Shown: positions 16,806 to 62,605 of the stretch, piece after piece
How positions within the stretch are numbered: position 1 is the stretch's first letter
Layout: each line of letters begins with the position of its first letter
Origin: Macrostomum lignano
Lineage: Eukaryota
Reading direction: 5' to 3'
DNA length: 64,000 nt
NCBI GenBank assembly: GCA_002269645.1
Contig: NIVC01000983.1
Location: 1-64,000, forward strand
Translations under genes and position numbers: made by a program
Notes under the pieces: generated by a model
Told to the model about the DNA's origin: nothing
What the model saw: the letters and a program-made list of their open reading frames with translations, nothing else
Database searches by the model: none

Positions 16806-17357
16806 ATCTATTTTTTAGAAAATTTCAATACCATATTATAAAAATAAATGTGTAAATTACATCAAGAATGTAAAATCCCACAAATCTACGAGATTTTTGT
16901 AATTTGTGAGCAACACTCCATTCACCCCGATGTGGGTATACTCAATACCACTCCCCCATTTTTAATCATCCCTCAAACATTTCCGTGTAATCAATTATAA
17001 AACTGAAAATACTCTGCCTACACTACTGCATCTACTGAAATAAGTAGCGCTTTAGATTTATGACTTTTTAAAAAACCTCTGAAAAAATAAAAAGAAAAGT
17101 TCTAGTAACTTCGGATTTCAAATCAAGCCGTTTATGACGCCAAAGTTGAATTTGTAGCGTGAAAAATTTTATTTAATAATTAATTCGTGCTCCTTCAAAG
17201 TAGACAGATGTTGCAGAACAGGCAGCCATTGTTAACTATTGCTGACATCCTTTTCAGTTGCTGTCGGTAATCCAATTCCAGCTCTGCGGATGGCGCTCTG
17301 AAGTGCAGTTTGGAGCGGAGCATCAAGTTCAATTGCGAGTGTTCCTTTCCATATCTT

Positions 17358-17910
17358 TCCTCTCTGTATCTCCCTCTCTGTATCTCCCTCTCTGTATCTC
17401 CCTCTCAGTATCTCCCACTCTACGTATCTCCCTCTCCGTATCTCCCTCTCCGTATCTCCCTCTCAGTATCTCCTTCTCCGTATCTCCCACTCTCCGTATC
17501 TCCCTCTCAGTGTCTCCTTCTCCGTATCTCCCACTCTGTATCTCCCTCTCAGTATCTCCTTCTCCGTATCTCCCACTCTCCGTATCTCACTCTCTGTATC
17601 TCCCTCTCTGTATCTCCCTCTCTGTATCTCCCTCTCTGTATCTCCCTCTCTGTATCTCCCTCTCAGTATCTCCCACTTTACGTATCTCCCTCTCCGTATC
17701 TCCCTCTCCGTATATCCCTCTCAGTATCTCCTTCTCCGTATCTCCCACTCTCCGTATCTCCCTCTCAGTGTCTCCTTCTCCGTATCTCCCACTCTGTATC
17801 TCCCTCTCTGTATCTCCCTCTCTGTATCTCCCTCTCCATATCTCCCACTCCGTATCTCCCTCTCCGTATCTCCCTCTCCGTATTTCCCTCTCCGTATCCC
17901 CCTCTCTCCG
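17358..17910. repeat. 14-bp minisatellite (GTATCTCCCTCTCT), copy B
   Basis: Same family as 14045-14365. Confidence 0.93.
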
Positions 17911-18258
17911 TAGATTTCTCAGGCTGCTATTAGCAATCGTTTTCTTAATCAACAAACTTGAATGCTCCTATTCTGCTGTCTAAGCCTGAAGCCCAGTTCA
18001 ATTCATCGGTTGATGACTCAACCCCTCCCCCCCCCTATTGAGCGTTTCTGTCTAAAAAGCTGCCTTTTAGCTTTTCTAATAACTGAAGTCGGACCAGGCG
18101 TGAATAATGGGATTGGGATAATTTCCCGAAACGAAAAACTCCACGTTGCTACATATGGATGATGTAGAGCTTTGGGAGCTCACTGCAATTTCTCAGTTTT
18201 GGTGGTGGCTAATTAGATAATAATTCCCCCAATTAATACAAGTAACCTAATCTGCAGG

Positions 18259-18902
18259 TGCTAGATTAGCAATCCATTGTATTCGTGCATCCTTGTGGGC
18301 TAGATTAGCAATCCATTCTATTCCTGCATCCTTGTGGGCTAGATTAGCAATCCATTCTATTCCTGCATCCCTGTGGGCTAGATTAGCAATCCATTCTATT
18401 CCTGCATCCTTGTGGGCTAGATTAGCAATCCATTCTATTCCTGCATCCTTGTGGGCTAGATTAGCAATCCACTCTATTCCTGCATCCTTGTGGGCTAGAT
18501 TAGCAATCCATTGTATTCCTGCATCCTTGTGGGCTAGATTAGCAATCCATTCTATTCCTGCATCCTTGTGGGCTAGATTAGCAATCCATTCTATTCCTGC
18601 ATCCTTGTGGGCTAGATTAGCAATCCATTCTATTCCTGCATCCTTGTGGGCTAGATTAGCAATCCATTCTATTCCTGCATCCTTGTGGGCTAGATTAGCA
18701 ATCCATTCTATTCCTGCATCCTTGTGGGCTAGATTAGCAATCCATTCTATTCCTGCATCCTTGTGGGCTAGATTAGCAATCCACTCTATTCGTGCATCCT
18801 TGTGGGCTAGATTAGCAATCCATTCTATTCCTGCATCCTTGTGGGCTAGATTAGCAATCCATTCTATTCCTGCATCCTTGTGGGCTAGATTAGCAATCCA
18901 TT
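18259..18902. repeat. 39-bp minisatellite (GCTAGATTAGCAATCCATTCTATTCCTGCATCCTTGTGG)
   Basis: About 16 highly homogeneous units; probably the neuropeptide gene intron. Confidence 0.97.
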
Positions 18903-19384
18903 CTGAGTTCAAATGAATCGCAGAATTGAACCACGGACTTACCCTCAGCCATCTCAATCAGCTTCATTTCTAATAGATGTTCAGCGACATTGCCGAATCG
19001 AGCCTCGGACCTCTTCCTGCCCGGATGCCACGAGTTGTGAAAGTGGACGCTGCGGAAGTAGGCGGGCCGGTCTTCGGAGGAGCCGCCGCCCCCGCCGCCG
19101 CCGCCCCCGCTGCTGCCACCCCCGCCGCCAGCCGGAGTCATCGACTGCTGCGGCTGCTGACTGCGACAGGCCGGTCCCCAGCTTCTGCACGGCATCAGGT
19201 TGAAGAAGCGTCGAGCTCTCGACAAAGTTGGCGAAGCCGAAGATGGCGGAGTAGCTAGACAGAGGCCGGTCAGCAGCAGCAGCAGCAGCGGCAGCAGGTG
19301 CAGCGGCGGCTGTCGTTTGTACAGCGCGCCATCGGCTGGCGAAGGCATGGCTGATGATGGAATAGTTTGAGCTGGCTGGTTCAA
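18890..19384 (-). CDS. Secreted neuropeptide precursor with a corazonin/GnRH-like amidated peptide (SVHFHNSWHP-G-RKR) and a Cys-ring peptide (FFNLMPCRSWGPACR)
   Basis: Hydrophobic signal PLHLLPLLLLLLTGLCLA; furin-type RARR (19208-19219); Gly-rich spacer; amidation/cleavage signal G-RKR (ends 19010). A strong donor G|GTAAGT at 18943/18942 suggests the exon really ends at 18943, with the 39-bp array intronic. Confidence 0.8.
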   Translation of the reverse strand: MNQPAQTIPSSAMPSPADGALYKRQPPLHLLPLLLLLLTGLCLATPPSSASPTLSRARRFFNLMPCRSWGPACRSQQPQQSMTPAGGGGGSSGGGGGGGGGSSEDRPAYFRSVHFHNSWHPGRKRSEARFGNVAEHLLEMKLIEMAEGKSVVQFCDSFELRMDC

Positions 19385-19664
19385 TTGGATGACAGTCTCC
19401 GGGTCAGGCCTTCCAGATTGATGGCGAAGTTCGCGAGGGGCGGCTTGATTTTATTTTTGGCAGAGGGAATGCCCGGGGAATCAGGGGGATTGGCTAACTG
19501 GGAGTCGGGCCACTCATCCACTCGCTACACCTGGCTGCGATCACAGAAAATTGTTTTGAGTCACTGTTAGCCAACTCTGAGTTGATGTGAAACCTGGCAC
19601 AGCTGCTGAAGCAGCTGTAGAACAAAAATGGATCACTGATTTCTGTTTCTTCGCCATCCACTTT

Positions 19665-19970
19665 GTCACTTTTTATCTTGTCACTCTCCACCTTGTCAGG
19701 TTCCGTCTTGTCACTCTCTCCCTTATCAGGTTCCGTCTTGTCACTCTCTAACTTGTCAGGTTCCGTCTTGTCACTCTCTCCCTTATCAGGTTCCGTCTTG
19801 TCACTCTCTCCCTTATCAGGTTCCATCTTGTCACTCTCTAACTTGTCAGGTTGCGTCTTGTCACTCTCTACCTTGTCAGGTTCCGTCTTGTCACTCTCCA
19901 CCTTGTCAGGTTCCGTCTTGTCACTCTCCACCTCGTCAGGTTCCGTCTTGTCACTCCCTTCCTTGTCACT
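19665..19970. repeat. 30-bp minisatellite (TCAGGTTCCGTCTTGTCACTCTCTCCCTTA)
   Basis: About 10 units. Confidence 0.92.

Positions 19971-23046: not shown

Positions 23047-62605
<39,559 letters not shown>

What the first reader, a model, noticed from the sequence alone, without database searches (positions are those of the whole stretch)
19010..19069. Corazonin/GnRH-like amidated peptide in an atypical position of a probable flatworm precursor
Seen: on the minus strand the precursor encodes ..DR-PAYFR-SVHFHNSWHP-G-RKR. Established: lophotrochozoan GnRH/corazonin-type peptides have an HFSxxWxP-amide pattern (octopus pQNYHFSNGWHPGamide); from memory, the leech peptide is QSIHFSRSWQP. H, F, N, W, H, P and G all align with the octopus peptide. 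Canonical precursors place one pGlu-peptide immediately after the signal peptide. Here there is no N-terminal Gln, and the peptide lies about 65 aa downstream, behind another peptide and a poly-Gly spacer. Inference: a structurally rearranged, non-pyroglutamated corazonin/GnRH-type hormone. GnRH-like precursors may already be annotated in other flatworms, so novelty must be checked.
Basis: partly seen in the sequence, partly recalled or inferred. Interest (0 to 1): 0.82.

Follow-up and report, generated by a model that had tools for sequence, protein, structure and literature searches.

The report
Divergent corazonin/GnRH-like flatworm neuropeptide gene
A small two-exon gene of the flatworm Macrostomum lignano encodes a secreted precursor with one corazonin-type ("invertebrate GnRH") amidated peptide; flatworms are already known to have this hormone family, but this copy lacks the usual N-terminal glutamine and sits far from the signal peptide.

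Summary
Window 19010-19069 (minus strand) encodes R-PAYFR-SVHFHNSWHP-G-RKR. It lies in a 149-aa, two-exon secretory precursor of Macrostomum lignano that overlaps the UniProt fragment A0A1I8GWJ3.

A profile of 13 non-flatworm spiralian corazonin-type precursors scores the protein at 19.9 bits (E 2.8e-8). The best of 5000 shuffles scores 7.6 bits. Among 1204 six-frame ORFs of the window, only this exon hits. Profiles of GnRH/AKH-type, vertebrate GnRH and arthropod corazonin precursors do not match.

Novelty is limited. Planarian Smed-grh-1 (QSYHFSNDWLP-amide, 2010) and polyclad Stylochoplana pusilla GnRH-2 (QNMHFSNGWQP-amide) are clear flatworm relatives.

The atypical features hold under the only available gene model:
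- Arg replaces the pGlu-forming Gln.
- 66 residues separate the signal peptide from the peptide.
- The associated peptide has no Cys pair and no detectable similarity to the family.
- The family's conserved phase-0 intron is absent.

Of 75 family representatives recovered, only this protein and one multi-copy metagenomic precursor lack the Gln. The upstream "other peptide" matches nothing known.

Transcript, orthologue and receptor evidence could not be obtained. Verdict: a probable genuine but divergent corazonin-type precursor, a new variant of a known kind, of moderate interest.

The parts
19250..19348 (-). Start codon (19346-19348) and predicted signal peptide, aa 1-33 (MPSPADGALYKRQPPLHLLPLLLLLLTGLCLA|TPP)
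   Evidence: This is the first in-frame ATG of the ORF. Mean Kyte-Doolittle hydropathy is 2.5-2.7 over aa 16-32, and small residues sit at -3/-1 (C, A). The cleavage site was placed by rule of thumb; no SignalP was available. The poly-Leu is encoded by a CTG run.
19208..19249 (-). Pro-region TPPSSASPTLS ending in the furin-like site RARR (aa 34-47)
   Evidence: Translation. Processing at RARR is inferred.
19166..19207 (-). FFNLMPCRSWGPAC (aa 48-61), a possible C-x6-C loop segment of unknown meaning
   Evidence: It matches neither elevenin (0.8 bits) nor the CRZ profile (-0.8 bits). Internal duplication with the CRZ-like peptide is not supported (p = 0.07).
19076..19129 (-). Low-complexity Gly/Ser linker (GGGGGSSGGGGGGGGGSS, aa 74-91) encoded by a GGC/GCC microsatellite
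   Evidence: TRF finds a period-3 array at 19082-19134; translation.
19052..19066 (-). PAYFR (aa 95-99). R99 occupies the position of the family's pGlu-forming Gln and is a candidate monobasic cleavage site (R94 at P6, Ser at P1', but Phe at P2).
   Evidence: Alignments. Seventy-three of 73 single-copy family representatives have Q at this position. The cleavage itself is inferred.
19022..19051 (-). Corazonin-type peptide core SVHFHNSWHP (aa 100-109)
   Evidence: HMM match at aa 100-116, 18.7-19.9 bits. It shares 6 of 11 positions with Smed-grh-1 QSYHFSNDWLP and 5 of 11 with S. pusilla QNMHFSNGWQP.
19010..19021 (-). Gly110 (amide donor, 19019-19021) and the tribasic convertase site RKR (19010-19018)
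   Evidence: G-[KR]2-3 follows the peptide in all 75 family representatives, and a single Gly giving Pro-amide is common (e.g. WHPGKR).
18943..19009 (-). Associated peptide, exon-1 part (SEARFGNVAEHLLEMKLIEMAE + first base of E136)
   Evidence: It contains no Cys, and a GAP-only HMM of 44 family members scores it at 1.3 bits, which is noise.
17298..18942 (-). Intron of 1645 nt, GTAAGT...CACTTCAG, phase 1, mostly minisatellite
   Evidence: Splice sites read. The junction reproduces UniProt A0A1I8GWJ3 exactly. Repeats are listed.
17254..17297 (-). Exon 2: ...(E)RHPQSWNWITDSN plus the TGA stop (17254-17256)
17168..17173 (-). AATAAA polyadenylation signal, about 80 nt after the stop codon
   Evidence: Sequence read. 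Its function is inferred.

Best explanation
The locus is a two-exon Macrostomum lignano gene for a 149-aa secretory prepropeptide. Its one recognisable bioactive module is a spiralian corazonin-type ('invertebrate GnRH') peptide. It is the macrostomid counterpart of planarian Smed-grh-1 and polyclad GnRH/corazonin precursors.

Proposed mechanism:
1. The signal peptide directs the precursor into the secretory pathway.
2. A prohormone convertase cuts at R111-K112-R113.
3. A carboxypeptidase removes the basic residues.
4. Peptidylglycine alpha-amidating monooxygenase uses Gly110 to leave a C-terminal Pro-amide.
5. The N-terminus is most likely made by monobasic cleavage after R99. This gives SVHFHNSWHP-NH2 ([M+H]+ 1246.586), one residue shorter than the canonical peptide and not pyroglutamated.
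6. The peptide is released from a few neurons and activates a corazonin-type rhodopsin-beta GPCR.

Shown here: the sequence, the ORF, the splice sites, the motif's statistical fit and the existence of flatworm relatives. Inferred: signal-peptide cleavage, all processing steps, the N-terminus, expression and the receptor.

The simplest history is that low-complexity sequence (including CTG and GGC runs) expanded between the signal peptide and the peptide within one exon, and that Gln changed to Arg, replacing exposure by signal peptidase with a convertase site.
For: - The exon is 100% identical to M. lignano UniProt A0A1I8GWJ3, whose model uses the same GT-AG intron.
- Against an HMM of 13 non-flatworm spiralian CRZ precursors, Mlig scores 19.9 bits (E 2.8e-8) and Smed-grh-1 scores 31.8 bits; the best of 5000 shuffles is 7.6 bits.
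- It is the only hit among 1204 six-frame ORFs of the window.
- The match is type-specific.
- Flatworm relatives have the same 11-residue frame and a single-Gly Pro-amide: Smed-grh-1 QSYHFSNDWLPGKR (PMC2953531) and S. pusilla GnRH-2 QNMHFSNGWQPGKR.
- Polyclads are reported to have GnRH-type and CRZ-type receptors (PMC13551398).
- A hydrophobic signal-peptide-like N-terminus lies in frame, the GTAAGT donor is a consensus donor, and AATAAA lies downstream.
- R94 at P6 and Ser at P1' fit the monobasic-site rules (Devi 1991 and Veenstra 2000, from my own knowledge).
- There are precedents for GnRH/CRZ-like peptides without Gln (xenacoelomorphs and Tian 2016, cited in PMC6188537) and for internal copies (P0077).
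Against: - Only about 17 residues carry the signal. The associated peptide shows no similarity (1.3 bits) and lacks the family's two Cys.
- The conserved phase-0 intron (Lineus L002, L001) is absent. The Mlig intron is phase 1 and lies 10 nt downstream of the equivalent position.
- The Gln is missing, and the peptide is not next to the signal peptide, unlike all 73 single-copy representatives.
- Phe at P2 of the proposed monobasic site is disfavoured (Devi's rule, from memory).
- The region is GC-rich, with long ORFs in several frames. The signal peptide and the linker are encoded by simple repeats, so the 5' half of the model is weakly supported.
- No transcript, orthologue or paralogue could be retrieved.
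- No M. lignano receptor was seen in a k-mer-limited search.
Confidence: 0.68

Rival explanations
1. The locus is a decaying or neofunctionalised duplicate. The gene descends from a canonical CRZ-type gene but has lost the Gln, the Cys pair, the FFRL-type peptides and the conserved intron. It has also gained repeat insertions. It may no longer yield a receptor-active peptide, while a canonical copy elsewhere in the recently duplicated M. lignano genome does the work.
For: Four typical precursor features are missing. Low-complexity CTG/GGC-encoded stretches fill the N-terminal half. M. lignano is a neopolyploid (PMC12896417).
Against: The reading frame, the amidation and cleavage signals, both splice sites and the AATAAA signal are all intact.
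Confidence: 0.15
2. The match is a chance motif. An unrelated low-complexity secreted protein, or a spurious ORF in GC-rich repeat-rich DNA, happens to contain HF..SW.PG-RKR.
For: The signal comes from only about 17 residues. Extrapolated to a whole six-frame genome, the expectation is about 0.3. Other frames here are also open. There is no transcript evidence. UniProt names the fragment 'Spondin domain-containing protein'.
Against: The motif sits in frame with an ATG and a signal-peptide-like segment, in an independently predicted spliced gene model. The Arg falls exactly at the pGlu position, and the Gly plus tribasic site fall exactly where the family has them. No Pfam domain, spondin included, is detected. 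Flatworms are expected to carry such a gene.
Confidence: 0.09
3. The gene is of the same family but the 5' model is wrong. An unrecognised upstream exon encoding a signal peptide splices to the acceptor-like sequence cctacttccgcag|C immediately before Val101. This would restore the canonical 'signal peptide then peptide' layout, and the 66-aa 'spacer' would be intronic or 5'UTR sequence.
For: A pyrimidine-rich ...ttccgcag sequence lies right at the R99/S100 codons. The upstream ORF is built largely of simple repeats in GC-rich DNA where open frames are cheap.
Against: In the one canonical gene whose exons I mapped (Lineus L002), the signal peptide and the peptide lie in one exon, and nearly all genomic ORF hits run from a signal peptide into the peptide. 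The junction codon would be xxC, which cannot encode Gln. The in-frame ATG with a good hydrophobic core needs no extra exon. GC3 is highest in the annotated frame (0.72 versus 0.64 and 0.59).
Confidence: 0.08

Closest known systems
[quoted passage not shown] 2010, PMC2953531; GB GU295185)
   Same: Both are flatworm secretory precursors with one CRZ-type peptide in the same 11-residue frame: x-S-x-H-F-x-N-x-W-x-P, then a single Gly and basic residues, giving a Pro-amide. Six of 11 positions are identical.
   Different: In Smed-grh-1 the peptide starts with Gln directly after the signal peptide. It is followed by two ...FRLKK peptides and a Cys-x-Cys C-terminal domain. Mlig has Arg for Gln, a 66-aa N-terminal pro-region, no FFRL peptides (only 'PAYFR' upstream) and no Cys in the C-terminal part.
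Stylochoplana pusilla (polyclad) GnRH-2, BCO16381.1, and the polyclad GnRH/corazonin systems (PMC13551398; PMC10396302)
   Same: The flatworm CRZ-type peptide QNMHFSNGWQP-amide shares 5 of 11 positions and the same processing signals. Polyclads also have candidate receptors.
   Different: It has the canonical layout plus FFRV/FFRL peptides and a Cys pair, as in Smed-grh-1. None of these is present in Mlig.
Spiralian corazonin-type ('invertebrate GnRH') precursors, e.g. octopus pQNYHFSNGWHPG-amide, Lineus QGFHFSQSWRPN-amide, Helobdella QSIHFSRSWQP-amide
   Same: The core H-F-x-x-x-W-x-P-G plus basic site is shared: 19.9 bits against their profile, and 7 of 12 positions identical to octopus.
   Different: Seventy-three of 73 single-copy representatives start with Gln directly after the signal peptide. 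The complete (not intron-truncated) members carry a two-Cys associated peptide: 44 of them passed that filter for the GAP model. Two genes whose DNA I examined (Lineus L002, metagenomic L001) have a phase-0 intron in its helix. Mlig meets none of these.
Non-canonical GnRH/CRZ-like precursors: xenacoelomorph peptides lacking N-terminal Gln, a Nemertoderma westbladi paralogue with two ligands (Thiel 2018, PMC6188537), and the metagenomic multi-copy precursor P0077
   Same: They show that CRZ/GnRH-like peptides can lack pGlu and can lie internally, released by basic-site cleavage on both sides.
   Different: In P0077 the internal copies are flanked by dibasic KR sites, are tandemly repeated, and the canonical Cys/helix/intron tail is kept. 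Mlig has one copy, a monobasic N-terminal site and a non-canonical tail.

Membership tests
Spiralian corazonin-type ('invertebrate GnRH') neuropeptide precursors | Core peptide x-x-[YF]-H-[FY]-S-x-x-W-x-[PAS] recognised by a family profile | tested here: met
   19.9 bits, E 2.8e-8, against an HMM of 13 non-flatworm members; the best of 5000 shuffles is 7.6 bits; it is the only hit in the six-frame window. Position 6 is His instead of Ser.
Spiralian corazonin-type ('invertebrate GnRH') neuropeptide precursors | C-terminal Gly amide donor followed by a di- or tribasic convertase site | tested here: met
   WHP-G-RKR. The same layout occurs in all 75 representatives, several of them with GRKR.
Spiralian corazonin-type ('invertebrate GnRH') neuropeptide precursors | N-terminal Gln that cyclises to pGlu (typical; exceptions are known in echinoderm and xenacoelomorph peptides) | tested here: not met
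   Arg99 aligns with the Gln. Seventy-three of 73 single-copy representatives have Gln.
Spiralian corazonin-type ('invertebrate GnRH') neuropeptide precursors | A single peptide copy immediately after the signal peptide ('N-terminal peptide' architecture) | tested here: not met
   The copy is single, but it starts at residue 100, 66 residues after the predicted signal-peptide cleavage site. This depends on the unverified 5' gene model.
Spiralian corazonin-type ('invertebrate GnRH') neuropeptide precursors | Associated peptide with two conserved Cys flanking an amphipathic helix | tested here: not met
   There is no Cys after the peptide. A GAP-only HMM of 44 members scores 1.3 bits, while shuffles reach 4.6 bits. 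A few other hits (P0142, P0144, P0145) also lack Cys.
Spiralian corazonin-type ('invertebrate GnRH') neuropeptide precursors | Conserved phase-0 intron inside the associated-peptide helix (shared with AKH and CRZ genes; Li 2016, PMC5024129) | tested here: not met
   Lineus L002 has ...VMKIIQ|GT and L001 has ...FINDIIE|GTAAGG, both phase 0. The Mlig donor is phase 1, after KLIEMAE+G, 10 nt downstream of the equivalent point.
Spiralian corazonin-type ('invertebrate GnRH') neuropeptide precursors | Peptide activates a corazonin-type rhodopsin-beta GPCR; such a receptor is present in the same genome | tested here: inconclusive
   A search with the Platynereis CRZ receptor returned 65 relatives, none labelled M. 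lignano. Activation is not testable with these tools.
Flatworm grh-1 / GnRH-2 type precursors (Smed-grh-1, S. pusilla GnRH-2) | 11-residue CRZ-type peptide ending in Pro-amide (single Gly) | tested here: met
   (R)SVHFHNSWHP-G compared with QSYHFSNDWLP-G and QNMHFSNGWQP-G.
Flatworm grh-1 / GnRH-2 type precursors (Smed-grh-1, S. pusilla GnRH-2) | Two x-[FY]-F-R-[LV]-[KR][KR] peptides and a Cys-x-Cys domain downstream of the CRZ-type peptide | tested here: not met
   Neither is present downstream in Mlig. The only possible trace is 'PAYFR' directly upstream, too short to evaluate.
GnRH/AKH-type peptides (spiralian GnRH-1/-2, AKH) and vertebrate GnRH | Match to the family profiles | tested here: not met
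   -1.9 bits (spiralian GnRH/AKH), 4.6 bits (vertebrate GnRH) and 1.0 bit (arthropod corazonin).
Elevenin (L11), considered for the upstream FFNLMPCRSWGPAC segment | C-x8-C loop with the ...P-x-C-R-G motif, recognised by a profile | tested here: not met
   The loop is C-x6-C. A small L11 HMM scores 0.8 bits, while shuffles reach 11.3 bits.

The most novel reading that the evidence does not exclude
M. lignano makes its corazonin-type hormone in a new way. The peptide has moved from the signal-peptide-adjacent position to an internal position in the precursor. A Gln-to-Arg change exactly at the old signal-peptidase/pGlu position now lets a convertase release a shorter, non-pyroglutamated decapeptide (SVHFHNSWHP-NH2) that still activates a CRZ-type receptor. 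This would be a caught-in-the-act transition from an 'N-terminal peptide' precursor to an internally processed one.
Probability: 0.35. Interest if true: 0.55.

Novelty: new variant of a known kind. Interest (0 to 1): 0.4.

Why it matters
Corazonin/GnRH-type signalling is an ancient bilaterian system, and its role in flatworms is almost unstudied. Smed-grh-1 has only an expression pattern, and the polyclad receptor data are unpublished. Macrostomum lignano is an early-branching rhabditophoran with RNAi and transgenesis (my own knowledge), so a defined ligand gene would make the system's role in a simultaneous hermaphrodite testable. If the unusual architecture is real, it also gives a natural test of how far the pGlu N-terminus and the 'peptide right after the signal peptide' layout are required for this family. 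If it is only a decaying duplicate, the value is limited to correcting a mis-named database entry.

Tried and rejected
1. Pfam scan of the precursor: no family, even at E<=10.

2. Transcript or identical-protein look-ups for P0001, the unspliced ORF, the spliced 149-aa product and three start variants: none on record.

3. Homologues by k-mer search with the precursor found only the UniProt fragment. The search with a family alignment found no new flatworm. A JGI metagenome scan found none.

4. Literature string search for the peptide: no paper.

5. Homology of the associated peptide despite an eye-catching 'MKLIE' / 'MKIIQ' / 'KLIEM' resemblance: rejected, 1.3 bits.

6. Conserved intron: rejected; the phase differs and the position is 10 nt away.

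7. Internal duplication (CRSWGPAC versus NSWHPG): protein p = 0.07, no DNA similarity, CRZ HMM -0.8 bits. Rejected as unsupported.

8. Upstream Cys loop as elevenin: rejected.

9. M. lignano CRZ/GnRH receptor: not found among 65 hits, but the method is k-mer limited, so the result is inconclusive. GPCR papers checked gave nothing specific.

10. Alternative acceptor before Val101: considered. It cannot restore a Gln and was not testable.

Full report
**What is there**

The window is Macrostomum lignano genomic DNA. Exon 1 of the ORF is 100% identical to the UniProt fragment A0A1I8GWJ3.

The gene lies on the minus strand:
- The ATG is at 19348-19346.
- Exon 1 runs to 18943 and ends in a consensus donor (G|GTAAGT).
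- A 1645-nt phase-1 intron follows. It consists largely of a 39-bp and a 14-bp minisatellite.
- It ends at the acceptor ...CACTTCAG|AG at 17298/17297.
- Exon 2 is 44 nt and ends in TGA (17256-17254).
- AATAAA lies at 17173-17168.

The spliced product is 149 aa:
MPSPADGALYKRQPPLHLLPLLLLLLTGLCLA | TPPSSASPTLSRARR | FFNLMPCRSWGPAC | RSQQPQQSMTPAGGGGGSSGGGGGGGGGSSEDR | PAYFR | SVHFHNSWHP | G | RKR | SEARFGNVAEHLLEMKLIEMAEERHPQSWNWITDSN.

**Is it more than chance?**

- The strict motif HF...W.PG[KR][KR] occurs once in the six-frame translation and in 0 of 200 simulated windows.
- I built an HMM from 13 non-flatworm spiralian corazonin-type ('invertebrate GnRH') precursors taken from the supplement of Thiel et al. 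2021 (PMC8557429). It scores the protein at 19.9 bits (E 2.8e-8 per sequence).
- The best of 5000 shuffles of the same protein scores 7.6 bits.
- Among all 1204 six-frame ORF segments of the window, only this exon hits (E 6.9e-5; the next best is 6.3 bits).
- The match is type-specific: -1.9 bits against spiralian GnRH/AKH-type, 4.6 against vertebrate GnRH and 1.0 against arthropod corazonin profiles.

The caveat is that only about 17 residues carry the signal. Across a whole six-frame genome, the motif alone would be expected about 0.3 times by chance. The argument therefore also needs the context. That context is an in-frame ATG with a strongly hydrophobic signal-peptide-like segment, an independently predicted spliced gene model, and the amide donor and tribasic site in exactly the family's positions.

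**Relatives and prior knowledge**

[quoted passage not shown] Collins et al. 2010 named it and found expression in restricted CNS cells (PMC2953531). Its peptide, QSYHFSNDWLP-G-KR, has the same 11-residue frame and single-Gly Pro-amide as (R)SVHFHNSWHP-G-RKR, with 6 of 11 identities.
- A full HMMER profile search of 1.84 billion representative proteins returned 79 hits. One of them is Stylochoplana pusilla (polyclad) 'GnRH-2', BCO16381.1: QNMHFSNGWQP-G-KR followed by ...FFRVRR...FFRLRK and a Cys pair. This is the Smed-grh-1 architecture.
- GnRH and corazonin precursors are also annotated in the polyclad Prostheceraeus crozieri (PMC10396302).
- I found no paper that mentions the M. lignano peptide. 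UniProt calls the fragment a 'Spondin domain-containing protein', which no Pfam hit supports.

**How atypical is it?**

Of the 79 hits, 75 carry the motif.
- Seventy-three are single-copy, and all of these begin with Gln. Where the ORF is complete, the Gln sits at the end of a signal peptide.
- One exception is the M. lignano protein, with Arg exactly at the Gln position.
- The other is P0077, an unnamed 466-aa ORF on an ENA metagenome contig (L001). It has about 11 tandem CRZ-like copies, mostly without Gln.

The M. lignano precursor also differs in three further ways:
- It lacks the two Cys of the associated peptide.
- Its C-terminal part has no detectable similarity to a 44-member profile of associated peptides (1.3 bits; shuffles reach 4.6). 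The visually appealing MKLIE / MKIIQ / KLIEM resemblance is not evidence.
- The family's conserved phase-0 intron is not shared. That intron was described for AKH and CRZ genes by Li et al. 2016 (PMC5024129), and I confirmed it in Lineus (L002) and in L001. The M. lignano intron is phase 1 and lies 10 nt downstream of the equivalent point.

So the peptide and its processing signals fit the family. The rest of the precursor does not.

**The upstream 'other peptide'**

FFNLMPCRSWGPAC follows a furin-like RARR site. It is followed by a single Arg with no basic residue at P4, P6 or P8.
- It matches neither elevenin (0.8 bits; shuffles reach 11.3) nor the CRZ profile (-0.8 bits).
- A duplication relationship with the CRZ-like module is not supported (p = 0.07; no DNA similarity).

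I treat it as pro-region of unknown meaning.

**Mechanism (inferred)**

1. Signal-peptide cleavage near A33.
2. Convertase cleavage at RKR.
3. Carboxypeptidase trimming.
4. Amidation from Gly110, giving ...SWHP-NH2.

The N-terminus is the weak point.
- In favour of cleavage after R99: R94 at P6 and Ser at P1'.
- Against it: Phe at P2, which the classical monobasic rules disfavour (my recollection of Devi 1991 and Veenstra 2000).
- Cleavage after R94 would place Pro at P1', which is worse.

The most likely product is SVHFHNSWHP-NH2 ([M+H]+ 1246.586). The alternatives are N-terminally extended forms. The target would be a corazonin-type GPCR.

I could not show that M. lignano has such a receptor. 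A search with the Platynereis receptor returned 65 relatives, none labelled M. lignano, but that search depends on shared 5-mers.

**Rivals**

- A decaying or neofunctionalised duplicate in a neopolyploid genome (0.15).
- A chance motif in an unrelated or spurious ORF (0.09).
- The same family but with a wrong 5' model (0.08). An acceptor-like ...ttccgcag|C lies right before Val101, but it cannot restore a Gln. In the one canonical gene whose exons I mapped (Lineus), the signal peptide and the peptide share one exon.

No transcript, orthologue or homeologue could be retrieved with the tools available. These rivals therefore remain open.

**Verdict**

This is probably a genuine but divergent corazonin-type neuropeptide precursor of M. 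lignano, related to Smed-grh-1 and polyclad GnRH-2. The family, and its presence in flatworms, are already known. What is new is the M. lignano gene itself and, if the gene model holds, an unusual non-pGlu, internally placed version of the peptide. I rate it a new variant of a known kind, with interest 0.4.

Noticed in passing
L001 803-2203 (+) (ENA metagenome assembly ERZ27263986, contig k141_806384), protein P0077: A 466-aa ORF has a signal peptide and about 11 tandem corazonin-type copies flanked by KR (e.g. AEYHYSNKWTPG, GGLHYSNQWTAG, QQMHFSNGWVSG, NYHHSNGWKPG), most without an N-terminal Gln. It ends in the canonical Cys/helix tail and a phase-0 GTAAGG donor. This is a multi-copy CRZ-type precursor from an unidentified animal. 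I know of no published CRZ-type precursor with this many copies.
   Followed up: partly
window 17254-19150 (-), UniProt A0A1I8GWJ3 (P0001): The database entry for this gene is an N-terminally truncated fragment named 'Spondin domain-containing protein'. No Pfam domain is detectable in the product, so the name looks like an annotation error.
   Followed up: partly
window 17344-17912 and 18260-18904: The gene's single intron is about three-quarters minisatellite: a 14-bp unit x38 (with an 86-bp higher-order period) and a 39-bp unit x16.5 at 98% identity. Both create long spurious ORFs on both strands.
   Followed up: no
window 19676-19968: A 30-bp minisatellite (9.8 copies, 91% identity) starts about 330 nt upstream of the start codon, in the presumed promoter region. 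An AAAAATAAAA stretch at 19449-19458 could be a TATA-like element.
   Followed up: no
window 55652-58129 (+): An 825-aa ORF with reverse transcriptase (RVT_1) and GIY-YIG endonuclease domains, the domain pair typical of Penelope-like retroelements.
   Followed up: no
window 26738-28414 (-): A long open exon encodes a Laminin G domain (Laminin_G_2, 47.6 bits), part of an unrelated neighbouring gene.
   Followed up: no
window 19166-19207 (-): The segment FFNLMPCRSWGPAC lies after a furin-like RARR site in the same precursor. It is a possible disulfide loop (C-x6-C) that shares 'SW.P' with the CRZ-like peptide. It matched neither elevenin nor CRZ profiles, and its meaning is unknown.
   Followed up: yes
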